A DNA stretch of 64,000 nucleotides from Rhodosorus marinus CCMP1338 (Eukaryota; Plantae; Rhodophyta): the NCBI GenBank assembly GCA_029953675.1, contig JAMWBK010000005.1:558001-622000 (forward strand), in the 5' to 3' direction. The position numbers were made by a program, and so were the translations under genes. This document shows, in pieces, positions 20,578 through 57,732 of this stretch; the stretch's first letter is position 1, and each line of letters starts with the position of its first letter. Below the pieces are notes generated by a model. It did no database searches and had not been told where the DNA came from. It saw only the letters and a program-made list of their open reading frames with translations.

Positions 20578-23500
20578 CTAAAATTTCGAGATCGCTTTAT
20601 GCACACAGAGATTAATAGCTTCCGCGATGACTTCTTCATCCGAATGAGTACGGTCAAGGAATGCAGTTATCTTGCGGTAAATTCTTACAGCATCTTTCTC
20701 CATGAAGTCCGGGAGAGTGTTCTCCGTGTAAGTTACTGTACACTCGCGATTGTTCTCCTTGCGATCGACCTCCAAAAAACTACCAGTGATGTTCACTACG
20801 ACCAGGCCTAACTGGGCAAACACGGGATTGACATAAGAGACAAATCTGAATGGCTTCCGTCGTATCAATACCAGACTTACCGTTCGCATGGAAGTATTGT
20901 ACGTAATTGTCACTGGCACTGTTCACTAGAAAGTTGCAGTGGAGTAAGAGAAATTCGTGAAGAACAAGAGCTTGAAACGGCGATACGACATGGTTGAGCT
21001 GATTCTCGAAAGCTCCAAGGCTTTTGCTAAAAAGAAAGACCGGAACAGACAGCATCCTGAACCCCAATTGCTTTGCTCGCCTTTCGAATGTCTGAGTGTA
21101 GTCAGATACAACGTTTCCATCGCACGCGATCCAATTGATGTTGATATGAAAGCAAGTCTCCAAACTGAAAAAGGAGTCGCAGCTCAGCATTATCCACTCG
21201 TTTTCCAAACCCCTAAACGGCTGCATACCGACCATAAACTTCAATGGTTCCTTCGCAGAGTACCCATGGCGCCACGGTAACAAGATCTTACGTCCATTCC
21301 GCATGATCTCAACATGCTCAGGGCTAGTCTTTGTCATCAGCTCAAAGAGTTTGACGAAGTTTGAAAAGATTTCACCATCACCACCTCTCTCCGCTTGAGT
21401 CGGTTCTCCAGTGAGAGGTCCAGGAGCGGCTCTATTGGCGAGCAAAACGAACGAAGCTTTCCGACATATTTCGTGGCTCACGAGGTCCAAGTTGACGTCC
21501 AGTCCGTCAACAAGAATTTGATCCAGCTTGTTCCAATTCACCCTTTCAGGTCCATACTCAAAAACAGTTGAGCGAGCCAGAAACGCGTTCTTGGCCCGTG
21601 ACCATAGGCAGTAGCCATATTGCTGTTTCTTAGATGCAGCTTCGTCGATGCGAACACGCCGTATAACTCGAACTCCACGGGATTCTGGTTCTACGATCAG
21701 CTCATGAAACTGTTCCCCCTTGGTCAAATAAACACTTTTGGTAGCTCTCACTCGTGACAGGTGCGAGATGGCATTCTTATTCTGGGTCTGCTCACCCTCC
21801 GGAGACAAAAAAGTTTCATCCGATATTCCGGTCACGACTTGATAGTCCATGACCATACGTTGACAAATGAGCTCCTTGACCAGAGCAACCAATTCTTCCT
21901 CCTCGGCTGATACTTTTCCCGTTGACAACAGATATCCATACTCTTCAGATCCCCTCACACGCAAAAGATGCTCATCTGGTGTCCACGTTGTAGTTAGTGG
22001 CAAAATGGACGGGTCGACAAATGTCTTCCACAGCGTCTCCTCTGGCAGGACTAGTGGACTGTCGGAGGATTCTCTATCTTCGACGATCATTGCCTTTTCG
22101 TGGTCAGTCGCGTAGAGGTGCGTATTATAGGGTGCCACTCGCACTGAGATGTCGTCGAACTCAGCATCCAAGATCCTCGTCGCGGCGAAACGCGCTAATT
22201 GCTCATTACCGCTGGTGGATCCTCCGCCGCTGAGGTGGTCAATCAATGCTCTCGGGCTCGGGGAGCCCCTCCAGTCCGTCTTCATATGTAATCCCCGTTG
22301 CAGGCTTGAGTCCTTCGAACTTAGACTAGAGTGGGTAATGCGATTGGTGAGACCAAGGTCGTACTTGCCTCGCATGCTCGCAATCGTCCTGCAGTCGATT
22401 AGAGAGTAGAGTGTCCAAGGAAACAAGAAGACACGCGTTAGGTTCCAAGAGTAGAATGGCAACTCTCGCGTGACGGGACGAATTCAATCACACCTTCGGG
22501 AAGGCAAGCCAGCGAGCCTCGAGGTGTTCTGTTGATCCGCACTTCGGGCAAGATCCCTCATCCGAGAGTACTCCGTCATATCTCCCTCCTGTCTGAAGGG
22601 CGAGTAATACTCGTCTCCGTACTCCACGCTTGAGTTTGTGTCGTCTTCCATCATCCCGCGATCCTCGTTGTTCGGAGGACTAGGAGGGACGAATATTGCG
22701 TCATCGTGCTTGCGAAATTCTTTCTGACTGTTCAACCGGATATCCTCCGCGTGCCCATCGTCAAAAAAAGGCACCACAGGCTTTTCCAGAGGAGCTTGGA
22801 GGAGGGCATAGTCGTCAAATCTCTTGCAGCAGAAGCGGATTCGTAACCAGGAATCGGGCACCGTAAACTTCTGAAAGGCCACTTCTTGAACCGTTTCTCC
22901 TAATTGTTCATGGGTTTCACCGGTAACACCCCGGACAGCCTGCTCGACTGGAAACTTGCTGCCAGAAGGCAAACTGGAAATTTCTGAATTATTGCTCCTA
23001 GTCTCAATCAGCTTGAACTCTCTTTCGTCCAGGAAGAGAATCGGGACTTGATGACCAGGTGGACTCGACAATGAAATCGTCTCACAGACTGCGGCACCAG
23101 AACGAATGAGGTCTCAGATTCCGTGGTTGGCCGGCGTTGGAACATTTATGCACCGCACCGGGCAACCTACCCATTCCGGTGTCCAGAAGCCTTCGTTTGG
23201 TAATCTCTGCGAGAAGCTTATCGACTTTCATAACTCCGTTTCCTGCTGTCATTAGGATAATGCTAGTTCCTGTATAGGGAAAGGCCCGATCCATTTTTAG
23301 GTCGTTCCAGTTGTTCAGTGTCAGGTTGAGTGCTTCAAGCGTGTTCCCCTCCATGGCCGACGAAAGAGTCCCATACTCGGAGGAGTGAGCTCCCTTTTCG
23401 CTCTCATCATGGAAGCCACCAGTGGGAGCCCAGTTAACGGTGGAGGGGAAAACTGAAAACTCGTGCTTGATCCGGCGCAAAATCGACGCCGAGTCCTTTG

Positions 23501-37983: not shown

Positions 37984-39527
37984 ATGGCAGTGTTCGGCTT
38001 TGTTCACGAGACACAAAAACAATACAGCTCAGCAGGGATGGATTCTTACTGTACATTATTCTTCAACGTTTCCGTGGGAATACGAAGTACTCAGGGAGGA
38101 TGGCGGGGGAATCGACGAGTATCGATGCTGAGCAAAGATGTGGGACATCGTGTTCTTATTCTGGGAGGGACAGGACGTGTTGGACAGTCGATTTGTAGGG
38201 AACTACAACGCCGGTCGAGGCATGAATCAGTGAACTTAGATATATGCATAGCTGGTGAGCGTTAGGTTGGAGTTGTGGACCAGGATAGGAGGAGCCCCTT
38301 TGCTGATAACACCCTAGCTCTCACGTGTGGCAGGAAGGAATGAAAACGTCGGAGAAGAGATCGTGAGAGAGAGCCCCAGTCTGCAGTTTAAAAAAGTTGA
38401 CTACCGTGACAAGGATGCATTAGTTGCTGCTATGAAAGAAGTGGATCTTGTTGTCCACTCTGCAGGACCATTCCAACAGCGGCAGAGCGCTGAGGTTTTG
38501 GAAGCCGCCATCAGTGCTGGTGTTAACTACCAAGATGTTTGCGACGATGTCGATCACATGGAGATGTCGCGAGGTCTTCACAATGATGCAGTAGAGAGCA
38601 ACATAACTGCGGCAGTCTGTACAGGCATTTATCCGGGGATCTCCAATATGATGGCCGCCAAAGCCATTAGGGATCTCGATGTAGACCCGGAGCAAGTGAC
38701 ATTCGACTATTTCACTGCGTAGGCGAGCCCCAGAGCATTGCGTCCTCTAGACACAAGCTGTTCCCCTTTGACTTATCTGAGAAACATAATGTGTCGTTAA
38801 TTCAGTGGAACAGGAGGTGCGGGTCCAACCATCCTCTCGACAACGTTCCTTCTGTGCGGAGAAGACGTTAGAATCTATGTCGACGGGAAACCGACCATTA
38901 GGAAACCAGCCAGCGGAGTAAGAACCGTCGATTTCGGTGAACAGGTTGGGCACAAGAACGTATTTCTGCTAAATCTGCCGGAGGTCCTCTCTATAGCCGA
39001 GGTGTACAAAGTCCCTAACATCAGGTAAACTGAGATCAACCGTACTTCATCTGTAAGCCGAATCTCGCCCCGTTGCTTTCGGTGCTCACGTTGTCGCACA
39101 CACTTTTTTCAGCGCTCGATTTGGCACAGCGCCAGGTATATGGAATGTGCTAACGAGGTTTATGGCATACGCTGTCCCGAAGAACATACTCACCAACCAG
39201 GCACTAATTGCCAAGTTCTCGGAATTTATCGGTCCACTAGTCCGAGCTGTGGACGCGATTGTTGGTGGTACGACGGCCATGAGGGTCGAAGCTGTGGGAA
39301 CTGACGGTTCCTCGAGATCCCTTCTGTATGGCCACGAGGAGCTATCTGAATGCGTCGGTATTGCTGCGGCTGCCTTCACATGGCATCTGCTCACGAACAA
39401 GAATCTGCCAAAGGGTGTCTTGTACCCCGAGGAGCTGTTGAGTGACCCAGAAGAATTTGAGGCTGTCCTGGAGAGTGGTGTTAGAACCGCGTTCGATTGG
39501 AAAACGTTTACAGATAATTCCTTGTGA
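37984..39527 (+). CDS. Saccharopine dehydrogenase-like oxidoreductase, plastid-targeted (CPLD49/At1g50450-like), multi-exon
   Basis: MAVFGFV presequence; Rossmann VLILGGTGRVG; VVHSAGPFQ, YQDVCDD, GIYPGISNMMAA, FDYFTAGTGGAGPTILSTTF, LNLPEV, ARFGTAPGIWN. Confidence 0.85.
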
Positions 39528-42278
39528 TGAGATGTGTCTGCGCGACTTGATTCAGTGCTTTGAAGACCGAAAAGCGCGAAAACACGAAACATGCCCGTTC
39601 TCATATTCTCAGGCCCTTGCGTGCGCTCTCAATCTAGAACGTGCCAGCGACTGTTCCAGGTCGCAAGGGGGTGCAAGGAGCAACTGCCTGTGGCTGGGAC
39701 CTAAGTTGTGACCTCTAGCGGAATGAGAACTCAACAGGCTAGAGGTCTTGAAACGACAATTTGGGGCTGTTCTGTGGGAGTTTGACAGAGACTCTTTGCT
39801 GATAGTTTGTACGCCGATCGTCTGTATGAGTATCTCGCCAGCCTCATCGGCCGTCGCCACGGAAATTAGACCAAAAAAACAAAAGAGCCAGAAGAGCGAA
39901 GCTTGACGAGGAGCGGCTCTTCTCCGGCATGTCTTAACCATCAAAAAGGCCTAGCCATTCACTGGCGATGTCGACTGGGTATTCACTCGGTTTACCAAAG
40001 TGTGCCGCGGGAGGTGTATAAAGAAATCCGTGGAGATCACGCGCCAGAAACGAAGAGCATACAAAGTCATCCGTATATGGCACGGTACACAGGTTCTCCA
40101 TCCCAGAAGACCAAAAAATACCGACCCCCGTCAATCCCTCTCCTCAAATAGACTGGAAGAGAAAATCAACAACGAAACATAAGCACATCAAATGGCCAAA
40201 CAAATTTTCTTCTGCTAATTGAATAACGAACGCAACGAGAACGACCGCGTTTAAGAAAGAAAATTCTCACTTTCGTCCTTGATACGCAAATTCATCCCTA
40301 AAGCAAGAACCATTTCTTATGAAAACTACTTTAAATTCATATATAATTCAAATACGTTTGGTCTTCGGCGTATATTCCCAAAAGTAAATAAAAACGAAGC
40401 CTGCTAGAGCTTTTCCCCTCATTTTTAAGAATAAAAAACGTATAGTTCTAAATATGATGGATTTTAATGGAAGGAAAGAATAGTATTTGTTGAATTTATA
40501 GGCTCGGGAATTCGCTTCTTGGTTTTTACAATCAGTGAAACTGTATTTATTCGAATTGTTTTTATTAGTTTAAAAATACGGTGGGTTGTATAGTAAATAC
40601 AATGAAGAGATATCTTGTCGTGACGAAATCCGACTTTTTTATTCCAATATATTGTATATACCCACTAGATTTTTTTACCGCAGTGGTTCGAAACCACCTA
40701 ACTTTGAAGGAACTAAGAAATAATTTTTAAAATAAAGCTGTTCTGAAATTCTTTCGCTTGTCACATAGCAGGGGTGGTAGGTAAGAATAGTCTCGACTTC
40801 TATCTCCAAGTGTAGATCGTCCAGTTCCTCATTTTTTTTGTCTATTCTTATTCCGATTCTCTTTTCTTGACCCGTTGCAAAGTCTTTGCTTTAGTTTTAG
40901 AAAATTTCAACTTTTCTTATATACGAATCTACGGCCAGGCATTGGAGTCTAAGGAGGCGGGGGGGGGTGTTGCCCCAGAGAATAGCTATAGAAAACTATA
41001 CCCCAGGTGTGGAAGACCTTGGTTTTGCGCTAGAATACAAAAAAAGAAATTTAATGACAGAAGAGGAAATCTATTTTCGCTTGCCAGGGGTATAAATGCG
41101 GACAATAATGAAAAACAAATAGAGGGGTGATTTTCTATACTAGATGGATTCTCCTTTTTCAGTTGTGGTGACAAGCAGAGCAGATCACATGCTCCCGAAA
41201 AAGAAGAAGAAAACGAACCACATATCCGAGGATTTGGCAAAATGGCAACAGGAAGCATAAGATTAAATGACCCATCCGGAACAACGGGGGGGGTATAAAA
41301 ATCACAAAACACGTTAATCCGCAGTAATATACCATTTTTCGAAAGTTAGGTGAGAATGTTGGATGTCTTAGGGGGGTAGAATCTGGCAAAATATCGAGCT
41401 CTTTTTTCCATGATTGGGTGAAAATGATACCGCAGAAAGGCTGGAGGATTTCTGTGAGACTCCGTAGGGGGGAGGAACGGATGCTACCTGAAATTGCATG
41501 AAGAGATTCTTACCTGGGAAACAGTTGGAATTGTTTTGAATCATGGAGTGTCCTACGTCAAGGGCTTGTTCAGTAGAACAGTTCCCGAGGGAAGGGGGGG
41601 GTGGTTTACAAGGGTTGATTGAAATAGTGTCTGTTTTCAAGATGCTGACGTTGTTTGAGAAGAGGCGAGAGGGGTGGGGGTGAAGAGTGGTATGAGGATA
41701 GTCACATATGGGAAGGATCTAAGGTTTTCGGACAGAACAAGGATAGAAGGTGGTCGTGGCCGTTGAAAAATTTTGTGAGCTCTGATAAAATGAATTGTCT
41801 TTATCTAGGAAGTGGATGGGGAAAAGTTGGGTGGAGATGACCTAGGTTGAAAGGGACGGGGAAGGGGGGGTTGGTGAAACTGGCCGCGGGTTGGAAGAAT
41901 GGGATTTTGTTCGGTCCAGGGAGGAGGAGGACAAAAAGGATTTTTTTAGGGTAAAGGCAGGTTGTTGTCAACTGGGTCTTTTTCTCTTGGAGGGGGGGGG
42001 GGGAAGGGAGGGTGGGTAAGACAGCTGAGCGGCATTGTAAGTGTTTGGTTGTTTTGCGTGAGCGGTTTGTCTGGTTTTGGTTTTGTTGTTTTTTTTGCAA
42101 TCTTTTTTGTGGCCCAATGACACGAGGATGGTTTCTGCAGGATAGGATTTGAGGAGCCTGGGATGGAGTTTTAGCTAAAGGACTGGTTGACTGGGAGAAA
42201 ACAAAAAACCAGAAAAGGAAGGGATTTGTGTTTGCTTTTTTTTCCTTCTGGTGGAGTACGGAGGAGGAGGGGGGGAGT

Positions 42279-44086
42279 ATGGCTAGACGCTTGGGGACAA
42301 TCGCTTTTGGCGAGGACGAAAGGGAAGCTGCGGACGAGTTTGTACAGGCTTTGACGACGGACTCCCAGACGGAGTCAGTAGCGGAGACAGAAGGCGAGGA
42401 CGAATCTGGGGAGGAAGAACAGGCCCCAAGCAGAGATCAGGACTCTGAGGACGAACTTATTCCTGCGGCGCAGGTGTTGATGCTCCCTCCGGCAGATCAC
42501 TCTGGAATTGAGTCAACTATGCAGAACATCTTCTCGCTGGTACACTCTGGCATTGATTCGTTTACCAGCAGCTATGCATCGTCAGCTCTCGGGAATGAGG
42601 GAGTGATCTCGCAGCTGAAGAGACGCAAGTTCCTGGTCAGCAAGCAGGTCGAGGAGTCTTTTCGTACCTGTCCCCGTGACGTCTTCGTTCCAGACTCGCA
42701 GAAGGCAGTCTCTTATGACATGTCACCGTTGAGATTGACCGAGTACGAGTTCAACATTTCTGCTCCAGATGTGTATGCTAATGCGCTCGAGGTTCTAGAA
42801 TTTAAGGAGGGCGACAGGTTCCTTGATATTGGAAGTGGCTGCGGGCAGCTTACGGCTATGGGGGCAGTGCTCTGTGGGAAGACTGGCAGCGCTCTTGGAA
42901 TCGACTTGAGCGAGAAGACTGTCAGCTTTGCGAGGTCGAACGTTGAGAAGCTTAAAGTCGAAAGCCCGAGATTCGTTGAGAAGGCCTGTGATGTCGAGTT
43001 CATGATTGCCAACGTGTTCCTCCTGGACGTGGAGTCGCTGCCATCGAAGGACAATGACGGACGATTTGATAAGATTCACTGTGGTGCTAGCTGCCCGCCT
43101 AGTCGGCTAAATGCTCTTGTCGCATTACTTCGACCTGGTATGTGTCATGGGTCCCAGCGACGCTTTTCAAAATAGCATTTATCTGACAAATTCTGTACTT
43201 GTGCAGGTGGAAGTCTTGTTACTCCTTGTGGAAAGGTCATGCTCTTGACGAAGAAGCATATGAACGGATCAACGACTCAGAAGAATGTCGCAGCGGTAAT
43301 ATACGGACCGCTGATTGTTCCGAGCGATCTAGAGGTTATAATGCACATGTATAGGCTCTCCATTGGGAAGGCTTCTCGTCTGGAGGGGCATGAGACCATG
43401 ATAGAAGCTGACCTGAACGGCATGGTGGCAGTCGAGGAAGTAAGGGATTTGTTCATGAGCCATGAGGGCAGCGACTTCACTTTTGTCGTTGAAGAGAACG
43501 GAATGGAGTACAAAATTCCAGCCCACAAGGCTATCCTGTCCTCTAGGTCGGGGCATTTTCGTGCCCTGTTCAATTCCAATATGAAAGACTGTGTCTGTGC
43601 GAGCACCACACCCCCAGAAGAGTACAGCAAGGCAGACCTGATAGAGTGTCTGCGATACATGTACACTGAGACGGTGAGTCCTAGAAAACGTTACCTTTTA
43701 CAATGGATGTTTTGGCCAGAGTTATTCCTCATTCGTCGTGTTCAATGCTTTAGGCTAACGTTAAGGTGGAAAACTGCGTGCAGCTGCTACGCCTGTCAAA
43801 GTTTTACGATGTGTCCGCGGGAATCTTTCGACTGTGCGAAGAGGTATTGTACTCCAGCCTGGACACGTCAAATGCAGCTAGTATTCTTCACTTGAGTAAT
43901 TGGTACTCTTGTGAAAGCCTGAAGAACTGTACCACACAGTTCATACTGGACAACCTGGATGAAGTTCGTCGTTCGGAAGATTGGAGTCACCTCGATCGCG
44001 ATGTCGTCGAGGACGTTCTGATAGAGTCCTCGAAACGGAACCACATGATCACTCACCTAATAAACTCTTTTAGCCAGAGTACATGA
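42279..44086 (+). CDS. Protein-L-isoaspartate O-methyltransferase-like (PCMT/PCMTD) domain fused to a BTB/POZ (+BACK-like) domain, 3 exons
   Basis: FRTCPRDVFVP, NISAPDVYANALEVL, FLDIGSGCG (SAM motif I), FDKIHCGAS, LLRPG|GSLVTP and YGPL. These continue into SDFTFVVE...IPAHKAILSSRSGHFRALFNSNMKD...LRYMYT (BTB) and NCVQLLRLSKFYDV...LDTSNAASIL...LKNCTTQFILDNL. Confidence 0.9.
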
Positions 44087-47119: not shown

Positions 47120-48019
47120 TCAACAACGCCTGGACTCAGTCTGCAATCCCGGTCGCACTGCCAGTCCCATCGAAGCGTCAATCACAGCACCATGGAACAT
47201 CTTTGAAGCTGGACTTGTTGACAAATAGAAAATGTTCTCTGCGACATGTGTCGGGGAAATGAGGACTCCTTTAGGCATACCCGCAATAAAGCTATCCGGA
47301 TCGTCGAGTTGGCTCAGTGTACTCTTCTGGAACATTTCAGTCTCAGTCGCTCCAGGTGAAATACAGAAAATATCTACATTACTGTGTACGTTATCGGCGG
47401 CAAGATGCTTGGAAAGATAAGCAACTGCAGCCTTTGACATTAGATCCGCGGCGTGATACTCGGGGAAGACCGCGGCTGATCCTCCACCAACAGAACCGAC
47501 GAAGACAACAACTGTTCTTTCCTCCTGTTTCCGCAACGGAATGAGACCACGGCTCACCCACAAGGGTCCCAACGAATTCACTCTCATTAAAGCCGTATCC
47601 TTCTCAAACTCAGTTGCACCCTCTCCACAGTATGAGTCTACGGTCGCAGACCCCAGGGCTGCGTTGTTAATAATAACATCCACGTGAGGCACTTCAGCGT
47701 CCTCCAACCAAACTTTGGTCTCAGCAACAAACTCGCTAACGCTCTTTTCGTCACCCTGGTCTAGTCGAACCGCCGTCACGTGCACATATTTACTTTTCAA
47801 AGCAGCCACCCCGTCGAGGTTCCTTAGATAAGTAAACAAAACCCTATGCCCTTCCCGCGCGAATTCCTCGACAATGGCCTTTCCAATCCCCGAGCTTCCA
47901 CCAGTGACCACAACATTCAACCTTCTCGCAAAAACCATCGACTCCGGTGTGTCCGGACCTCTCGAGGACAATCTCGAGGAAAAACTCGATGTACTCGCGA
48001 GATCTAGTCGCTCATTCAT
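47120..48019 (-). CDS. Short-chain dehydrogenase/reductase, intronless, non-canonical active site
   Basis: VVTGGSSGIGKAI (TGxxxGIG), IINNAALG, VNSLG, FVGSVGG, ADLMSKAAV, ISPGATETEM, GAVIDASMG. One uninterrupted ORF. Confidence 0.9.
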   Translation of the reverse strand: MNERLDLASTSSFSSRLSSRGPDTPESMVFARRLNVVVTGGSSGIGKAIVEEFAREGHRVLFTYLRNLDGVAALKSKYVHVTAVRLDQGDEKSVSEFVAETKVWLEDAEVPHVDVIINNAALGSATVDSYCGEGATEFEKDTALMRVNSLGPLWVSRGLIPLRKQEERTVVVFVGSVGGGSAAVFPEYHAADLMSKAAVAYLSKHLAADNVHSNVDIFCISPGATETEMFQKSTLSQLDDPDSFIAGMPKGVLISPTHVAENIFYLSTSPASKMFHGAVIDASMGLAVRPGLQTESRRC

Positions 48020-51000
48020 CTTCAACCAAACCCAATTCCCAAACCAGACGATAACTTCAAAAGCCCTCCCCAACGTGTTTATACAACGCAGCACCACGGA
48101 ACACCCAAAAGCAAAACTCCGAAAACAACAATGTCCTACAATGTAACTCCACTCGACACCCAAAAGCGAAAAACTCGTAAAAACAAGTGCCCTCACTCAA
48201 GAAAGGATATTATGCCCTCCTTACCACAGGTCATCTCAGGTACTCCACCTTTCTCACTCCTCCCCCACAACCCCTCCTTCCTATTTCGGAACTGAAGACC
48301 TGCTTATAGACTCTTTCGTCCAAGCCCTCCTTTCTGACAATTTATCTGTCCTTTTCTTCCTTTTTTTCCGCGACACAAGTCAAACAGGAAACTCTCCTCC
48401 GTTTCCTCTTGCAAGGAACAAGCAAAAAAAAAAAAATAATATATTGAAATTGAACCATTCGGATTTGGGAGAAAAAATTTGTGTAATTGTGTACCATTTC
48501 CATATAAAAACAAATATAAAAAAGGAAAATGGCAGAGCATTATTAAAGACAGCAAATGGGCTACACTTTTCCTGAAGACGAGACAGAAAAAGGGGGGGGG
48601 TTGAGGGGGTTAGGTGTTTTCGGTCGTTGGGAGAAAGCTACTAAATGAGTTTTGTTTTTAGCACGCTATGGCTTCTTTTCATGGGAATCGTGTTCCACCC
48701 GCTTTACCCCTTGTTTGAAGCGAATATCAATATATAGAAGTACAAAACTAAATTTTGAACGTGGTTAATATCATGCCAACTATTCGCCAAAACAGTTGGT
48801 ACTTACAAAAAACTTTTTAAAAACAACAAAAGCTTTTATCCGGGAAAAATAAGTTTTCTTTCACCTACACTGGACGGGGATTATTTGCCCACAATTTTTC
48901 CTGTGTTTTCGAAAAAATAGGTCCAACAATGAAGAAACAATTGGCCGACCACCAAAGAGCTCGTTGGGGGGGGGGAGGGAGGGCTTGGGCGGCCTTCCAA
49001 ACAAACTTCTCTAGATAATGCATTGCAACTGAATTTAGAAGATAAAAGGAGCCTATATTTCTTAAATTAGACTATTTAAGAACAAGAATTCTATATCTGT
49101 TCATGTCAGATACAGTTCCTGACAAGTCCAACCGAAGACGGCAACCGATGCCGTCAAATGAAACTCTTCTCAAAAACCAAAATAAATCGTTCTTACTTCG
49201 CCATTTTGTTTCGGTAATCCAATCAACTATCGCGGATATGACGTAGGTTGTCCCGATGATATAAAACCTAAGGGAATACTACTTTTAACCGAGGACGTCT
49301 AAAGTCCCTACCTCCACTCCTGTGTGGCTATCTGAAAAAGTGAATATTACATGTGATGGCTCCAGACCCTGACACTCTTCTTTTCGTCCATATTACGATC
49401 AGTAGTTCAATTGATGTGGGGGGGGGGGAGAGGGTTCATTGGGCACGTCAATGAATTTTGTTACTATTTTTGTTTGGTTTTATTAAGTTTTTCGGTTCAC
49501 GAACAGGAAGCTTTGGCCAAGAAAAAATACCCCCCTAAAACTTTCCCGTCGGTCCTTCTTTCATGGAGGGGGTGCATTAATGACCTCTGTTTGTTTTGTT
49601 TTGGCCTTCTTTCCCACTGCGTCCAAAAGCCTTTTTTTTATTGAATTTGTTTTATGAAAACGGCCGATTAACTGGCGTTGTATCCATTAGCGAAAACAAG
49701 ACCTTACGGAAGAGAGTGGACTCGGAGATTGGTGTTCTAAAAAAGGGGGGGAAATGGGGTTCATCAGAATAATTTTTTTTGTTGGAATGGGCAGTTCTAT
49801 TGCGCAAGCGGTGACGAAGAGGTGTGGAGGGGGGGGAGGGGGGGAGGGGACAATTCAACGTAGTGCCTCATTTCGAGAAAACTACTACTACTAAAGAAGT
49901 TTTCTTTTCAGCCCACTGTAGAAAGCTGTATACGGGCATGAACGTATCATTTTCCCCCTACCCATCAACAAGAGTAAGCCTCCCTCTGGTTGTGAACAGG
50001 AAGTGTGTCCGCTGTGATTGCTTTGGAAGGTATTTGGCTTGTCGATAGGAAAAAGTTCTCCTCGGCGTGACTGTATATGTCTCTTTTCGCCAAGCAAAGC
50101 GAAAAATTGCTTTGAAATCGAGGTGGTTGAAAGGCCTGCCACCCGCTTGTACGCCTTGGTCCGCTTGCCAAAGTCCTGAGCACGTAGCCTATTTCCATCT
50201 ACGTGTTTCCTCTGCAAGCGATGGGCTCTCTCTCTCTCTTGAACGAGACCACTCAACGGGCAAGTGTTTCTTGAATTCTTTCTTCTTCGAGGCCGAGCGA
50301 AGCGCATCAATACGGCAAGAGTGTGAGTTGAGTGTGGGAGAGTTGCTAGGTTTTGAATAACTCTTTTAACTTGTGAAGCGAAAATTATCCTTGTAGTGTT
50401 TGAGGGAATGATGCGCCCGCTCACTGTCAGGTTACACTTGCTCATACAGAAGATGGGGAATCCTGAAATCTCGATTCGAAACAACTGCTCCTGAGGAAGC
50501 GCGAGTTTGCGTAAGGGGAAAGAAAGTCAAATACTGAGGGAATGACCCAGGACAGCAGGACCGAGGACCAAGGACCCCCCTCTCCCCTCCCCCCCCCCGC
50601 CCGGATTCCGGCCCCCAGCATCTGCCACAAATGGCAAAGGGGCATCGATTTGGGAAAACGGCCGTCAAGCCGTCCAGCTAATGCCATATAGTAGTTGCGG
50701 TGTGCAGGTTTCCATGATTGGCTGCTTTGACGCAGGTCCATAGGTAAGTTTGCAAGATGGAGCGACCGCCCTGATCGTCGTTGCCTAGAGTGAACAAAAC
50801 TTGACAGTACCAACACGGGCCACCCCTCCCTTCCTAGTGCACCTCATTCGGGGATTTCAACCCCCGATTAAAACAACCCATCCGATGACGGGAAGTTGAA
50901 CGAAGCTCCGCTGATTTGCCTATTAAATTGAATAAGCGAACGTCGCAAAACTTCAAGTTGAGGAATGGAGCGGCCACTGTGGAGGAGTTGGGCTAAACAA

Positions 51001-53860: not shown

Positions 53861-54922
53861 TCAGGGTCGGTTTGGGAGTGCCATTACTTTTGCTAATTTC
53901 TTCCTCTCCATTTTTGCCAGTTTCGCACCGTACGATAGTCCGATGTACCCCGCAATATTGTTCGCTAAGTTCAAACTGTCAGCTTCAACACCTCTCTGCT
54001 CAGTATCAAAAAATGATACAACACCTTCGCATTTCCCTGAAACTGCGACTGGAACAGCAAATCCAGTTTGGATACCGTAGCGTGTTGCAGTGCCCGCGCG
54101 AATAAAAACTTCAGGGTTGCTTAGGTTGGTCAGGGTCTCTGCCGCCATGGACTTGTAGACCCTGCCGATGAGCCCCACTCCAGGTTCGAAGCTCACCTTT
54201 CGGCTCGTCTCCTTGAAAAGCTCAACTGAAGAGTAGCCGTTGTCGAAATCAGCACCAATATGCGCACCCTTCAACCTCAATCGCATCACCGAGTCAGTCC
54301 TCGTTACCGAAGTAAGCCACACCTCGGCATACTTCCATCGACGCTTCTTGCACACAAGTTTCATCATTGGGCAAAGAGCCGTGAAGAGACAGTCGGACTG
54401 CTGAACAACTCTGTCCACCCAGGAGAGCATGTTCTTGTGCGAGCTCAGAGCAACTTCCATGTCAAGCGTAATCACCGCCTGCTTGTACTCGCGAATTAGC
54501 CTAAGCGAAGTTTGTAAAATCCTGGACTTCGATTGAGGCTTAGTCGCCGTCTCGGAATCCAACGTCACAACAAGGTCCGTCAATTCCTTGAATTTGTTCC
54601 CTACATTTGCGCGATACTTCCGGGAGTGCTCCTTATGCGCCTGTTTTCTTCCAATCGGCTCGTCGCTGACAGCACTCTGTTCCTCGTCCCTAAGCCTCTT
54701 CTGCCCAATAGCTTCCTTTGAATCATCGCCACTCCCCCTGGAGGGATCACTGTCCGCGAGCAATTGCTCAACATCTGAGTTGGCATACTCAAAGTTGTTC
54801 ACCTCCAAAAACAGCGCCCGCGGATCTTGCCATTCGTTCTTGCTAGGAGCACTCTGTTCCGGAGTCTTTTCCGCGGTCGCGAAACTTACCAGCTCCATAT
54901 CGCCGAAGATTGGTTCGAACAT
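53861..54922 (-). CDS. bHLH-GAF domain transcription factor, intronless
   Basis: Basic/HLH RKQAHKEHSRKYRANVGNKFKELTDLV...PQSKSRILQTSLRLIREY. This is followed by a GAF-like region WKYAEVW...FEPGVGLIGRVY...FIRAGTATRYGIQTGFAVPV...EGVVSFF...LANNIA. Confidence 0.8.
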   Translation of the reverse strand: MFEPIFGDMELVSFATAEKTPEQSAPSKNEWQDPRALFLEVNNFEYANSDVEQLLADSDPSRGSGDDSKEAIGQKRLRDEEQSAVSDEPIGRKQAHKEHSRKYRANVGNKFKELTDLVVTLDSETATKPQSKSRILQTSLRLIREYKQAVITLDMEVALSSHKNMLSWVDRVVQQSDCLFTALCPMMKLVCKKRRWKYAEVWLTSVTRTDSVMRLRLKGAHIGADFDNGYSSVELFKETSRKVSFEPGVGLIGRVYKSMAAETLTNLSNPEVFIRAGTATRYGIQTGFAVPVAVSGKCEGVVSFFDTEQRGVEADSLNLANNIAGYIGLSYGAKLAKMERKKLAKVMALPNRP

Positions 54923-57732
54923 CTTGTCCACGATTAGGTTAGCCACCTTTAAAGACTGCAAACCTCAACCGCACCTTCCGCAAAAACACACACGCGCACC
55001 AGGGGCAAGAGCACCGCAACCAAGCCAAACCAATCCCCCTCAATCTAAGCACTCACAAACCCTCCCAATAAAAAACGAAAACCCTCCCCAAACGCAAACC
55101 AAATCAACCCGGCCTAACACAAACCTTCAACAATCCTTCTCCTTCCCCAACCCTCCCAAAACATATATCATCCCACAGCAATTCTTCTCTCCGAGCTAAC
55201 TACCGCCCGCCTTCCTCCCTCCCAACCCCTTTCGCTGCATAAAGACTAAGTTGGCTCTCCACACTCAGCCCAGCAGCCCCATCCCATCCCTTCTCTTATA
55301 TTCCTCCACCGCCTCCCCCCCCCCGCCAACCCCTCCTCCTTACCCTACAAAAACGCCCAACAAATCTGTCCATCCCCACTCCCCCTACCCATCTCCAGTC
55401 GCTCTTTACCTTTCTCAACCATACCCTTTCCAAAACAACCCCACAAATTTCGAGCTCAGCTCCGCAAGAATTTCGCCTTTTTCGAAAAACAAATCCACCC
55501 ATCGACCCCCCTTGATTGTACAACTAAAATTGTCTCTAAATAGTGACATGAATGATAGCCCGGTAATATTGTATTTGCAATATTTTATAGCATTTTCGCA
55601 TGTAAGCATGGTGGTGGGGGTTAAACAGGACACAGAAGAAAACAAAAACGAAAAAGAGTCCTTTCCGACGAAGAAAGGCATGGTCGGAGAACATGGAAAA
55701 CGAGGAAAAGAAAATTATTCATAATACATATTCATATGCTGGTCAACGAAATAAAGTGATCTTCATATGGACACGTGCTTTAAATATGTTGGTGAAAAAG
55801 TTTACAGTCTGTCCTCATGAATATTTACCGCTTCTTGGTTGGTGGATGGCTTTTGTGGCGAGCGGGGATAAGGTTGGAGAGCGAGTATCTAACTAGTTTT
55901 GGTCATTGGTCTTAAAAAACAATAATTACGTTAATATTGTTGATGAAGTTTTACCAAATCAAATATATAGAATCTTAGAATTTGAAATATATCTAGATTT
56001 AGCCTACCATGCAGTTGTCGGCATATGAAGGAGAGAAAAAAAGGGGGGGCGGGGTGACCACGGAGGGGTACATGGTTCGATTTCCACCCCTTAACCTGAT
56101 GTTTGTAGTTTTGTTTATATTAGTCAATCTTCTTTCCATGCCATTTTCCGAAATGGAGGGGCAAATCGTCTGCCCCTTCCGTAGCTTTTCTCACCCTCTA
56201 TCGTTTTATATCTAATATTGGTGAAATATTAAAGAAATATTCTTGTGTGCGTTGGGGGGGGTAGTGAGGGGGAGCTGAATATCTTGTGCAGCTTTCTGGG
56301 CTACCAAAAAAAAAAAAGCTTTTAGGAAGGTGATATAAAATAAAAATAAACAGCGACTTTTTCGGCAATAACGTAACCGTGGGTCTAAAAACAGATACGA
56401 AAAAGACAAGTTTGAAAAAAAAAGGATAAATTCTGTGGCATTTGCTGAGTGTAAGATGAGTGTTTCTCGATGTTGGAGGTGTTGGCGTTTGATGTTTGGG
56501 CGGTGAAGTGCAGCACACTTGGCCGGTAGGGCAGTGCGCATAGCGGTGAGGGGGTTATGGAGCTTTTAGGTTTTTGGGGGATGACGTCTACGTATCCGTG
56601 TCCATAGCCCAACGTTTGCCAGCAGCTTAAGCTCCTGATACTGATTCCTTATAGTTGGGCAGCTCGCGCATTTGCAAGTTTGTACATCTTACCGGAGGCC
56701 CAGTAATCTGCTTTCTTTGTCACAATATCGTAAGGCCCCAGTTCAGCCTGAGGACGATTGATCTCCGCACTTTTTGGCGTGCATGCTCGGAACAAGATGC
56801 AACCACTTCTTGAGGACTAAAACTGACATCGCGAACTGACCCGATTGGGAAGAGAGTCAAAACTCGTGCTCGTGAATTGAAGAGCGAAGTCCGACGATCC
56901 TCTTTAGAACGATCCTACCCTCGGTCCTTGGTCTTGGGAATTTGTGTGAGAATGTCCCGCATCCTCCAGAAGCCAATACGCTAGCTCTGTATATCCACTT
57001 ATGGATCTTCGGAACTGGCTTCTTCCTTCTTGAAAATCAATCAGGTTTTTGGTAGAAATTCGGCCCAAATTTTTTCCTTGTACAGTGACTGTTAGAGCAG
57101 ACAGGCAGCGAGGATCAGGGCAGCTGATTGCCCGGCAAACGGTGGGGGGTCCACGCGGAAGATTCAGGCCCAAATTGCTTCTTGCCTCATCGCTTGGAAT
57201 TCTGATTAACAGCGGGTGGCTTAAGGTAGGGACTATGGGGGCTGCAAGGAGCAAGTCTAGCTAAGGAGGTTGTCCGTGGCTCCCTCGCGGCGAGCCCAAG
57301 CACATTGCAGGCTGTCGAATTTTGGAAGAGATAAACTGCGCTTAGTGAGCTGGTTTTTCCGTTTTGTTTGCACGTTGGTGACGGTTTCCAGTTTGTAGCG
57401 CATACTGCAGAGTTTTACGTATAGATTAGTTTATGGGGGAAATTTGGAAGTCTACGATCAGGAATTGCACATGCTGCATGATCTATTGAGGTGACTGAGG
57501 TGGTCATCAGCTTCATCTAGAACTTGGTCTTGGGGAGGAGCTTTTCGTGTTGGCTCACCACTTCGACACAATGTCAGCCCTCCGTAACGCCGTCCGACGA
57601 CGATTGCTACAAAAGTCGTGACCTTCCCCCGTGCAGTTTTCAGTAGTTTTCCGAAGTCCGCGTGCCGGGCATATCCCGCGCTCCGTCCACTTAGAAGGTT
57701 TGCTCAGCGGCAGGAACCTTTTGCTTCCTGCC

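What the first reader, a model, noticed from the sequence alone, without database searches (positions are those of the whole stretch)
42279..44086. PCMT-like isoaspartyl-recognition domain fused to BTB: a convergent damaged-protein E3 adaptor?
The methyltransferase domain resembles animal PCMTD1/2 in key motifs (ISAPDVYANALEVL, IHCGAS). PCMTD1 couples this domain to a SOCS box to recruit Cullin-5. Here the partner is a BTB(+BACK-like) domain, the classical Cullin-3 adaptor. This suggests an independently evolved CRL3 that recognises age-damaged (L-isoAsp) proteins or SAM-dependent substrates for ubiquitylation. I do not know of a characterised PCMT-BTB protein.
Basis: partly seen in the sequence, partly recalled or inferred. 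Interest (0 to 1): 0.8.

Follow-up and report, generated by a model that had tools for sequence, protein, structure and literature searches.

The report
Isoaspartate-methyltransferase-like domain fused to BTB
A red-alga gene joins a domain resembling the enzyme that spots age-damaged (isoaspartyl) proteins to a BTB domain that normally docks onto the Cullin-3 ubiquitin ligase, and it belongs to a widespread, unstudied family that probably tags such damaged proteins for destruction.

Summary
Window 42279-44086 (+) is a three-exon gene of Rhodosorus marinus. Its 552-aa product is identical to NCBI NDN08_001143. It has a disordered acidic N-terminus, a PCMT-fold AdoMet-binding domain, then BTB plus a 3-box/short BACK.

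It is not a one-off. An exhaustive profile search found at least 73 sequence clusters with both domains. Named members come from red algae, green algae, a glaucophyte and a heterolobosean.

The BTB keeps the Cullin-3 docking motif as phi-x-[D/E], here M412-K413-D414.

The methyltransferase domain keeps its AdoMet motifs and the pre-motif I Ser. The Thr found in the five canonical PCMT1 sequences compared is Asn here, as in 43 of 45 fusions. Animal PCMTD1 has His there, which blocks methyl transfer.

Close relatives of this domain are also fused to SOCS boxes or RING fingers.

Best reading (about 0.5): a CUL3 substrate receptor that reads isoaspartyl damage.

"Convergent" is doubtful. BTB-fused, PCMTD and RING-fused domains group apart from PCMT1 (99% NJ bootstrap). 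A shared reader domain with swapped ligase modules is therefore more likely.

No biochemistry exists for this family. I rate it a new variant of a known kind.

The parts
42279..43137 (+). Exon 1 (codons 1-286 plus the first base of codon 287). Encodes the acidic disordered N-terminus and most of the PCMT-like domain.
   Evidence: The spliced product is identical to NDN08_001143.
43138..43206 (+). Intron 1, 69 nt, GTATGT...CAG, phase 1. It splits the codon for Gly287 in 'LLRPG|GSLVTPCG'.
   Evidence: Homologues are colinear and ungapped across the junction.
43207..43673 (+). Exon 2. Encodes the end of the PCMT-like domain (post-motif III LVTPCG, strands beta6-7), the linker and the first two thirds of BTB.
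43674..43753 (+). Intron 2, 80 nt, GTGAGT...TAG, phase 0, inside the BTB domain after 'YMYTET'.
   Evidence: The alternative acceptor at 43765/43766 would delete ANVK. It is rejected because the annotated protein and all homologues keep those four positions.
43754..44086 (+). Exon 3. Encodes the end of BTB, the 3-box/short BACK and the stop codon TGA (44084-44086).
42279..42587 (+). Residues 1-103: acidic, poorly conserved, predicted disordered N-terminal region.
   Evidence: pLDDT is about 30. This region is mostly gaps or unalignable among homologues.
42594..43313 (+). PCMT-fold seven-beta-strand AdoMet-binding domain (residues 106-322; spans intron 1).
   Evidence: Pfam PF01135, E 3.6e-31. 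PDB sequence hits to PCMTD1 9oma at 4e-22 and PCMT1 1i1n at 1.6e-14. Foldseek TM 0.83-0.90 to PCMT structures.
42753..42767 (+). Pre-motif I, N159-I-S161-A-P. Ser161 aligns with the pre-motif I Ser of PCMT1. Asn159 occupies the position that is Thr in canonical PCMT1 and His in PCMTD1.
   Evidence: Alignments. Column counts: Asn in 43/45 BTB fusions, His in all PCMTD-type, Thr in the PCMT1 references (two further PCMT1 sequences).
42822..42845 (+). Motif I, L-D183-I-G-S-G-C-G (AdoMet binding). The post-motif I acidic residue Asp209 lies at 42903-42905.
   Evidence: These positions correspond to the PCMTD1 AdoMet contacts N86 and E112 described in PMC12590147.
43215..43232 (+). Post-motif III, L-V-T-P-C-G (substrate-pocket wall). 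LVTPC is invariant in the seven closest homologues.
   Evidence: The role of post-motif III is taken from PMC12590147.
43449..43855 (+). BTB/POZ domain (residues 368-476; spans intron 2).
   Evidence: Pfam PF00651, E 2.6e-17. Best PDB matches are KBTBD2, SPOP and KBTBD4. Foldseek SPOP 4j8z TM 0.85, rmsd 2.2.
43581..43589 (+). M412-K413-D414, aligned with the phi-x-E Cul3-contact motif (SPOP M-E-E, KBTBD2 L-S-E, KBTBD4 L-K-E).
   Evidence: Alignments. Across 64 fusions the first position is M in 52 and L in 8, and the third is D in 41 and E in 22. The motif's role is described in PMC3616122.
43871..44083 (+). 3-box plus short BACK-like helical region (residues 482-552).
   Evidence: Pfam BACK at 23.4 bits (cut-off 20.9). 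BACK_BPM_SPOP at 21.8 bits, below its cut-off of 27.4. The region is helical in the model. It aligns with SPOP to residue 178 and KBTBD2 to residue 183.

Best explanation
The gene encodes a substrate receptor of a Cullin-3-RING ubiquitin ligase whose recognition module is a PCMT-like, AdoMet-binding domain.

Proposed mechanism:
- The BTB domain dimerises. Together with the 3-box it docks on the N-terminal domain of CUL3 through the M412-K413-D414 loop.
- The PCMT-like domain, loaded with AdoMet, captures L-isoaspartyl (beta-linked Asp) residues that arise spontaneously in ageing proteins.
- The captured protein is then ubiquitylated by CUL3-RBX1 and degraded.
- Asn159 replaces the Thr of the canonical repair enzymes compared. 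The domain probably acts as a reader rather than, or more than, a methyltransferase, as shown for human PCMTD1, where the residue is His.

Shown here: gene structure; domain composition and fold; conservation of the AdoMet, pocket and Cul3-contact motifs; wide distribution of the architecture; repeated fusion of this domain clade to E3 modules.

Inferred: CUL3 binding, isoAsp as the ligand, weak or absent catalysis, and ubiquitylation.
For: 1. One gene, one protein. The spliced product equals the annotated NDN08_001143. Transcriptome-derived homologues carry both domains in one ORF: MMETSP1475, Purpureofilum, Erythrolobus, Pharyngomonas TSA and Flechtneria TSA.

2. The architecture is under selection. 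73 of the top 152 representatives (clusters at 50% identity) carry both domains. Pfam confirms BTB in 45 of 46. Named taxa are Rhodophyta, Chlorophyta, Glaucophyta and Heterolobosea.

3. The BTB is of the Cul3-adaptor type. Best sequence and fold matches are KBTBD2, SPOP, KBTBD4, KEAP1 and KLHL3. A BACK/3-box is present. The phi-x-E position is hydrophobic in 60/64 and acidic in 63/64. In KLHL3, E85A at this motif severely disrupts Cul3 binding (PMC3616122).

4. The reader domain looks functional. Motif I GxGxG, the motif I Asp and the post-I acidic residue are kept in 44-45 of 45 fusions, and the pre-motif I Ser in all 45.

5. The Thr seen in all five canonical PCMT1 sequences compared is Asn in 43/45 fusions. 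PCMTD1 has His there, and the Thr-to-His change abolishes most PCMT1 activity (PMC12590147).

6. Guilt by association. Of 53 non-BTB relatives, 10 carry RING fingers, 6 carry Yippee domains and 4 carry SOCS boxes. These include RING-PCMT-Yippee, PCMT-kinase-RING and PCMT-SOCS proteins.

7. Human PCMTD1 assembles a CRL5 and binds isoAsp only when AdoMet is bound (PMC12590147).

8. Cul3-BTB ligases are inferred to be ancestral in eukaryotes (PMC2785787).
Against: - No experiment exists for any member of this family.
- The third motif residue here is Asp, not the canonical Glu. Asp is untested for Cul3 binding.
- I did not verify a CUL3 gene in Rhodosorus.
- Asn is smaller than His and may not block the AdoMet-substrate channel. 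Motif I Asp and, in most of the family, SAPHxH / HVGA are PCMT1-like, so the domain may still be catalytically active.
- Even for human PCMTD1, ubiquitylation of substrates has not been demonstrated.
- BTB domains also serve purely as oligomerisation modules.
- The inter-domain geometry is not confidently modelled (pTM 0.49).
Confidence: 0.5

Rival explanations
1. It is a catalytically active protein-L-isoaspartyl O-methyltransferase (a repair enzyme). The BTB-BACK part only dimerises or oligomerises it, localises it, or makes the enzyme itself a CUL3-regulated protein.
For: All AdoMet motifs, the pre-motif I Ser, the motif I Asp and the post-I acidic residue are retained. Most of the family keeps the PCMT1-like SAPHxH and HVGA motifs. 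Over the catalytic core the Rhodosorus domain is nearer to human PCMT1 (distance 1.26) than to human PCMTD1 (1.76). Databases name several members plain PIMT. One family member (P0004) has Thr at the diagnostic position.
Against: The Thr present in all five canonical PCMT1 sequences compared is replaced by Asn in 43/45 fusions. The whole clade groups apart from canonical PCMT1 (99% NJ bootstrap). Its other members are fused to RING or SOCS modules. The Cul3-contact motif is under selection, which simple dimerisation would not need.
Confidence: 0.2
2. It is a CUL3 adaptor (or another BTB scaffold) whose PCMT-like domain reads something other than isoAsp. Candidates are another carboxylate-bearing degron or AdoMet/AdoHcy itself, which would make it a metabolite-gated ligase or methyltransferase with a different substrate.
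For: In PCMTD1, substrate engagement depends on AdoMet, which links the domain to methyl-donor status. The pocket residues after SAP differ from both PCMT1 and PCMTD1 in the red-algal subclade: SAP-[D/E]-V-Y. The seven-beta-strand fold is versatile, and there are weak Pfam hits to DOT1, PrmA and others.
Against: The pre-motif I Ser-Ala-Pro and post-motif III, which line the isoAsp pocket in PCMT1 and PCMTD1, are conserved. The best sequence and fold matches are all isoaspartyl methyltransferases or PCMTD1.
Confidence: 0.2
3. It is a gene-model artefact: two neighbouring genes, a PIMT and a BTB protein, wrongly joined.
For: No RNA data for Rhodosorus marinus itself were examined here. The domains are joined by a low-confidence linker at residues 342-359.
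Against: The linker and the first part of BTB lie in the same exon (exon 2) as the end of the methyltransferase domain, with one continuous reading frame. At least 73 clusters, including assembled transcripts from several phyla, have the same order of domains.
Confidence: 0.02

Closest known systems
Human PCMTD1/PCMTD2 (substrate receptors of CRL5; PDB 9oma; PMC12590147)
   Same: Both have an N-terminal PCMT-fold domain with intact AdoMet motifs and the pre-motif I Ser. Both have lost the canonical Thr. Both follow this domain with a cullin-docking module. PCMTD1 is the best PDB sequence hit (E 4e-22). Both fall in the same non-canonical clan apart from PCMT1.
   Different: The docking module here is BTB plus 3-box/BACK (Cul3 type), not a BC-box/Cul-box SOCS box (Cul5-elongin type). 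The diagnostic residue is Asn159, not His. Motif I has Asp183, not Asn. The protein lies outside the PCMTD subclade. It occurs in Archaeplastida and Discoba; the only PCMTD-type relatives placed taxonomically here are animal (human PCMTD1 and Elysia).
PCMT1 / PIMT (canonical protein-L-isoaspartyl O-methyltransferase; PDB 1i1n, 1kr5)
   Same: Same fold (TM 0.83). Same AdoMet motifs, the SAP motif, the motif I Asp and a post-motif III.
   Different: PCMT1 is a stand-alone protein of about 225 residues with Thr in pre-motif I. This protein has Asn, an extra conserved 'VPSD-x-E' helix after beta7, a disordered N-terminus and a C-terminal BTB-BACK. It groups apart from five canonical PCMT1 sequences.
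SPOP/BPM (MATH-BTB) and KBTBD/KLHL (BTB-BACK-Kelch) Cul3 substrate adaptors
   Same: A BTB with a 3-box/BACK, a phi-x-acidic loop, and a separate substrate-binding domain in the same chain. As in SPOP, the BACK is short and the substrate-binding domain is N-terminal to the BTB.
   Different: The substrate-binding domain is a methyltransferase fold, not MATH or Kelch. The third motif residue is Asp here rather than Glu.
Cereblon (CRL4 receptor that recognises C-terminal cyclic imides)
   Same: Conceptually it is also a cullin-RING receptor that reads a spontaneous, non-enzymatic damage mark derived from Asn/Gln chemistry (mentioned in PMC12590147).
   Different: It has an unrelated fold (CULT), a different cullin (CUL4-DDB1) and a different ligand.

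Membership tests
PCMT superfamily (Pfam PF01135 fold) | Significant match to the family profile and to the seven-beta-strand PCMT fold | tested here: met
   109 bits against a cut-off of 20.3. Foldseek TM 0.83-0.90 to PCMT structures.
PCMT superfamily (Pfam PF01135 fold) | AdoMet-binding motif I (acidic-x-G-x-G-x-G) and an acidic residue after beta2 | tested here: met
   LDIGSGCG at 182-189 and Asp209. Conserved in 44-45 of 45 fusions.
Canonical PCMT1/PIMT repair enzymes | Pre-motif I Thr-x-Ser-x-Pro with Thr (human T57) | tested here: not met
   The sequence is N159-I-S-A-P. Thr is present in all five PCMT1 sequences compared. It is Asn in 43/45 fusions.
Canonical PCMT1/PIMT repair enzymes | Methyl-ester formation on L-isoaspartyl substrates | not testable with these tools
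   Needs an enzyme assay.
Canonical PCMT1/PIMT repair enzymes | Groups with PCMT1 sequences in a tree | tested here: not met
   The split {5 PCMT1} | {all fusions + PCMTD} has 99% NJ bootstrap. The method is NJ only, and long-branch effects are possible.
PCMTD1/2 (CRL5 receptors) | C-terminal SOCS box (BC-box plus Cul-box) | tested here: not met
   Pfam finds BTB and BACK and no SOCS box. SOCS and BC-box motifs are found only in the PCMTD-type relatives.
PCMTD1/2 (CRL5 receptors) | His in place of the pre-motif I Thr, and Asn in motif I | tested here: not met
   Asn159 and Asp183 here. His and Asn occur in all BC-box proteins.
PCMTD1/2 (CRL5 receptors) | AdoMet-dependent, isoAsp-specific binding without catalysis | not testable with these tools
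   Shown for the human protein only (PMC12590147).
BTB-type CUL3 substrate adaptors | BTB fold | tested here: met
   PF00651 at 63.4 bits. SPOP TM 0.85, rmsd 2.2.
BTB-type CUL3 substrate adaptors | 3-box / BACK helical hairpin directly after BTB | tested here: met
   BACK at 23.4 bits, above the 20.9 cut-off. Helices at 483-551. Aligned with the SPOP and KBTBD2 3-box region. 16 of 46 family members pass for BACK and 14 for BACK_BPM_SPOP.
BTB-type CUL3 substrate adaptors | phi-x-E motif in the alpha3-beta4 loop | tested here: inconclusive
   M412-K413-D414 has Asp instead of Glu. Across the family the column is D in 41 and E in 22 of 64, so an acidic residue is selected, but Asp has not been tested for Cul3 binding.
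BTB-type CUL3 substrate adaptors | Physical binding to the CUL3 N-terminal domain, and a CUL3 gene in the same genome | not tested
   No complex prediction tool and no searchable Rhodosorus proteome were available. Cul3-BTB is inferred to be ancestral in eukaryotes (PMC2785787).

The most novel reading that the evidence does not exclude
Ubiquitin-dependent clearance of isoaspartyl-damaged proteins is an ancient, pan-eukaryotic pathway. On this reading a non-catalytic PCMT paralogue (Thr changed to Asn or His) became a 'damage reader' early in eukaryote evolution. It was wired to the ancestral Cul3-BTB ligase, and this is the form kept in red algae, green algae, glaucophytes and heteroloboseans. 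In other lineages it was re-wired to RING fingers (euglenids and others). In animals it was re-wired to the newly evolved Cul5-SOCS system, giving PCMTD1/2. The Rhodosorus gene would then represent the ancestral state of the human PCMTD ligases rather than a convergent copy.
Probability: 0.3. Interest if true: 0.8.

Novelty: new variant of a known kind. Interest (0 to 1): 0.6.

Why it matters
IsoAsp formation is one of the commonest spontaneous protein damages. Until 2022-2025 the only known countermeasure was repair by PCMT1. The proposal that human PCMTD1 marks such proteins for degradation is recent, and ubiquitylation by it has not yet been shown.

A large, conserved family in which the same kind of reader domain is hard-wired to a different cullin adaptor (BTB), and in other lineages to RING fingers, is independent comparative support for that degradation pathway. 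It extends the idea well beyond animals. It also provides simpler two-component systems (BTB adaptor plus CUL3, with no elongins) in which the pathway can be reconstituted.

Two further points are testable. The Asn versus His versus Thr position is a natural experiment on what turns a repair enzyme into a reader. AdoMet-gated substrate capture would link methyl-donor status to proteolysis.

Practically, database entries that name these proteins 'protein-L-isoaspartate O-methyltransferase' are probably misleading.

Tried and rejected
- Alternative acceptor for intron 2 (exon 3 starting at 43766). It is in frame, but I rejected it because the annotated protein and all homologues keep the four extra residues.
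- Word-indexed homologue search with the 46-sequence alignment returned 6 proteins, and with the methyltransferase domain alone returned 1. These were index limits and added nothing. The distribution therefore rests on the exhaustive HMM search plus 30 cluster look-ups. Most clusters come from unnamed Logan or JGI assemblies, so the taxonomic range is a minimum.
- 'Closer to PCMTD1 than to PCMT1'. This holds for the whole-domain HMMER score (82.7 against 59.6 bits). Over the catalytic core the reverse holds (1.76 against 1.26). I therefore dropped the claim of PCMTD orthology.
- Deep branching order inside the non-canonical clan. NJ bootstraps are 36-58%, too weak to say whether BTB or another module came first.
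- Literature searches for PCMT/isoaspartyl plus BTB found nothing relevant. The 2022 PCMTD1 paper (PMC9875861) is not held.
- tRNA and Rfam scans of the window found nothing.
- Small ORFs flanking the gene have no Pfam match.
- Antisense ORFs inside the gene are all 129 aa or shorter, and I did not pursue them.
Full report
**What is in the window**

The region 42279-44086 on the + strand is a eukaryotic protein-coding gene with three exons: 42279-43137, 43207-43673 and 43754-44086. The two short introns have canonical ends, GTATGT...CAG and GTGAGT...TAG. The spliced CDS is 1659 nt and encodes 552 residues.

That protein is 100% identical over its full length to NCBI 'hypothetical protein NDN08_001143 [Rhodosorus marinus]'. 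The window is identical to assembly GCA_029953675.1, contig JAMWBK010000005.1, over the 21.8 kb compared, and the annotated gene range equals the finding's coordinates. Rhodosorus marinus is a unicellular red alga of the class Stylonematophyceae.

The gene stands alone. A low-GC, purine-rich upstream region separates it from an NAD-binding epimerase-like gene. The next annotated gene downstream lies on the opposite strand and has no family match.

**Domain anatomy**

Pfam gives three hits:
- PCMT (PF01135) at residues 106-322, E 3.6e-31.
- BTB (PF00651) at residues 368-476, E 2.6e-17.
- BACK (PF07707) at residues 485-531, just above its curated cut-off.

An AlphaFold2 model built on seven homologues is confident in both domains (pLDDT mostly 85-95). 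It is disordered in residues 1-103 and in the linker at 342-359.

Foldseek against the PDB matches the N-terminal domain to isoaspartyl methyltransferases: human PCMT1 at TM 0.83, archaeal enzymes up to 0.90, and PCMTD1. It matches the C-terminal part to SPOP BTB plus 3-box (TM 0.85, rmsd 2.2 A) and to KBTBD2 in its CUL3 complexes.

By sequence, the best solved relative of the N-terminal domain is human PCMTD1 (E 4e-22), ahead of PCMT1 (1.6e-14). The best relatives of the C-terminal part are KBTBD2, SPOP, KBTBD4, KEAP1 and KLHL3, all Cul3 adaptors. One more intron, inside the BTB domain, is also needed.

**It is a family, not a curiosity**

A profile of the seven closest homologues was run with HMMER against 1.84 billion representative proteins. 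It found 225 proteins at E <= 1e-30.

I scored the best 152 with separate domain profiles. 73 carry both the methyltransferase and the BTB domain, 53 carry the methyltransferase domain only (many are fragments) and 26 carry BTB only. Pfam independently finds PCMT in 46 of 46 full-length fusions and BTB in 45 of 46.

Cluster look-ups and source names place the fusions in four groups:
- Red algae: Rhodosorus, Purpureofilum, Porphyridium, Erythrolobus, Galdieria.
- Green algae: Tetraselmis, Flechtneria, Micractinium.
- A glaucophyte: Cyanophora paradoxa.
- A heterolobosean: Pharyngomonas kirbyi.

Several of these sequences come from assembled transcripts, so the two domains are co-transcribed. 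Public databases call these proteins 'hypothetical', 'protein-L-isoaspartate O-methyltransferase' or 'PCMTD2'. Three full-text searches found no paper that discusses a PCMT-BTB protein.

**The BTB half**

Cul3 adaptors contact Cul3 mainly through a phi-x-E motif in the alpha3-beta4 loop and through the 3-box that follows the BTB. In KLHL3, E85A at this motif severely disrupts binding (PMC3616122).

In the HMMER alignments the Rhodosorus residues M412-K413-D414 align with SPOP M-E-E, KBTBD2 L-S-E and KBTBD4 L-K-E. Across 64 fusions the first position is Met in 52 and Leu in 8. The third is Asp in 41 and Glu in 22, so it is acidic in 63 of 64. The surrounding 'F-x-S-G-M-[RK]-[DE]-[AS]' stretch is among the best conserved parts of the domain.

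Asp and Glu interchange freely while everything else is excluded. That is what selection for a Cul3 contact would produce. Simple dimerisation would not require it. Asp itself is, however, untested.

**The methyltransferase half**

The AdoMet-binding motif I is present (LDIGSGCG, residues 182-189), as is the acidic residue after beta2 (Asp209). The positions that contact AdoMet in PCMTD1 (N86, T91, L94, E112, L113; PMC12590147) are occupied here by Asp183, Cys188, Leu191, Asp209 and Leu210. The Ser of pre-motif I is invariant, and post-motif III (LVTPCG) is conserved.

The informative position is the residue two before that Ser. It is Thr in all five canonical PCMT1 sequences compared: human, Drosophila, Plasmodium, Methanocaldococcus and Pyrococcus. 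It is His in PCMTD1, where it blocks the channel between AdoMet and the isoAsp carboxylate. The Thr-to-His change removes most PCMT1 activity (PMC12590147).

In Rhodosorus the residue is Asn159. Across the fusions it is Asn in 43 of 45, Thr in one and Arg in one. All BC-box (PCMTD-type) relatives have His.

The family has therefore lost the canonical Thr, like PCMTD, but by a different substitution. It also keeps the PCMT1-like Asp in motif I. Whether Asn permits methyl transfer cannot be decided from sequence.

**Relatives point to ubiquitin ligases again and again**

I scanned the 53 non-BTB relatives with Pfam. Ten carry RING fingers, six carry a Yippee/Mis18 domain and four carry a recognisable SOCS box. 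Several more have a BC-box by pattern. The architectures are:
- RING / split PCMT / Yippee, for example in the euglenid Urceolus.
- PCMT / protein kinase / RING.
- PCMT / SOCS box, the animal PCMTD type, for example in Elysia.
- EF-hand / PCMT, in Anaeramoeba.

The RING-Yippee proteins are of the Asn type (F-N-[IV]-S-A-P). The kinase-RING proteins are of the His type.

So at least three different E3 modules (BTB, SOCS, RING) are attached to PCMT-like domains that have lost the Thr. This is the strongest comparative argument that the domain serves as a substrate-recognition module for ubiquitylation.

**Homologous or convergent?**

I built a neighbour-joining tree of 75 non-canonical methyltransferase domains (the relatives with a complete domain, plus human PCMTD1) and five canonical PCMT1 sequences. 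It was restricted to the core shared by all. The five PCMT1 sequences separate from everything else with 99% bootstrap. An earlier version with three references gave 74%.

Inside the non-canonical clan the PCMTD and kinase-RING groups nest among BTB-fused groups, but support is weak at 36-58%. Over the core region the Rhodosorus domain is no closer to PCMTD than to PCMT1: mean distances are 1.58 and 1.61, and it is closer to human PCMT1 (1.26) than to human PCMTD1 (1.76). It is therefore not a PCMTD orthologue.

The simplest reading is one ancient non-canonical PCMT paralogue with exchangeable ligase-docking modules, not convergence of the reader domain. Cul3-BTB ligases are inferred to be ancestral to eukaryotes and Cul5-elongin ligases to be animal-specific (PMC2785787). 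The BTB form could therefore be the older one. NJ on long branches is not decisive, so I rate this novel case at about 0.3.

**Mechanism and confidence**

Best explanation (0.5): this is a CUL3 substrate receptor. The BTB dimer and 3-box dock on CUL3. The AdoMet-loaded PCMT-like domain captures isoAsp residues in damaged proteins, which are then ubiquitylated.
- Shown: gene model, domains, folds, motif conservation, distribution, and the fusion pattern.
- Inferred: Cul3 binding, the ligand, reduced catalysis, and the outcome.

Rivals:
- An active repair methyltransferase that uses BTB for oligomerisation or regulation (0.2).
- A BTB adaptor whose PCMT-like domain reads another ligand or AdoMet status (0.2).
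- A fused gene model (0.02). This is contradicted because the end of the methyltransferase domain, the linker and the first part of BTB share exon 2, and because of the transcript-derived homologues.

**Verdict**

The finding is real and well placed. 'Convergent' should be replaced by 'same reader clade, different cullin module', and the resemblance to PCMTD in 'key motifs' is partial.

The gene is already annotated, and the architecture is visible in databases. The family is uncharacterised, however, and it extends a very recent concept (PCMTD1 as a damage-reading ligase receptor) across much of eukaryotic diversity. I rate it a new variant of a known kind, with interest 0.6.

Noticed in passing
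P0067, P0068, P0071, P0076, P0077, P0088 (relatives, not in the window): Proteins of 730-920 aa with an N-terminal RING finger, a PCMT-like domain split by a long insert, and (in six of the 53 non-BTB relatives scanned, P0067 among them) a C-terminal Yippee/Mis18 domain. P0067 is from the euglenid Urceolus cornutus. They are of the Asn type (F-N-[IV]-S-A-P), like the BTB fusions. From my own knowledge, the Yippee fold is related to cereblon's CULT domain, which reads cyclic-imide damage. These could therefore be single-chain E3s with two damage-reading modules.
   Followed up: partly
P0033, P0084, P0060 (relatives, not in the window): His-type PCMT-like domains occur in tandem (P0033, P0060). 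In P0033 and P0084 they are followed by a protein kinase domain and a C-terminal RING finger. These come from unnamed ENA/Logan assemblies.
   Followed up: partly
P0057 (Anaeramoeba ignava); P0052 (Trebouxia sp.): P0057 is an EF-hand plus PCMT-like protein of 908 aa. P0052 is a green-algal Asn-type PCMT-like protein of 508 aa that sits inside the BTB-fused clade. Its C-terminal 210 residues match neither BTB nor any Pfam family.
   Followed up: no
P0013, P0038, P0045 (relatives, not in the window): Some PCMT-BTB family members show two BTB-like matches in tandem after the methyltransferase domain.
   Followed up: no
window 40000-42278: The upstream intergenic region has unusually low GC (0.41) and strong G-over-C skew (+0.22). 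It contains long G and purine runs, for example around 41860-42010. It may be a promoter or 5'-UTR region, or a repeat.
   Followed up: no
window 20780-22462 (-): A long ORF (560 aa) has a match to the DEPDC5 C-terminal region (PF19418, E 7e-07). It may be part of a GATOR1/SEACIT-type nutrient-signalling gene in a red alga.
   Followed up: no
window 53861-54961 (-): An ORF with a helix-loop-helix domain (E 6e-04) and a weak match to the N-terminal region of plant MYC-type bHLH factors (26 bits, below the cut-off). The assembly's annotation also calls a 353-aa gene here.
   Followed up: no
window 47120-48196 (-) and 38125-39527 (+): The neighbouring genes are a short-chain dehydrogenase/reductase (adh_short, E 9e-29) downstream and an NAD-binding epimerase-like gene upstream. 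No functional link to the finding is apparent.
   Followed up: partly
window 42279-42587 (residues 1-103): The N-terminus is very acidic (runs of E/D with S/T), disordered and not conserved in sequence. An acidic N-terminal extension of variable length (up to about 330 residues) recurs in the red-algal homologues.
   Followed up: no
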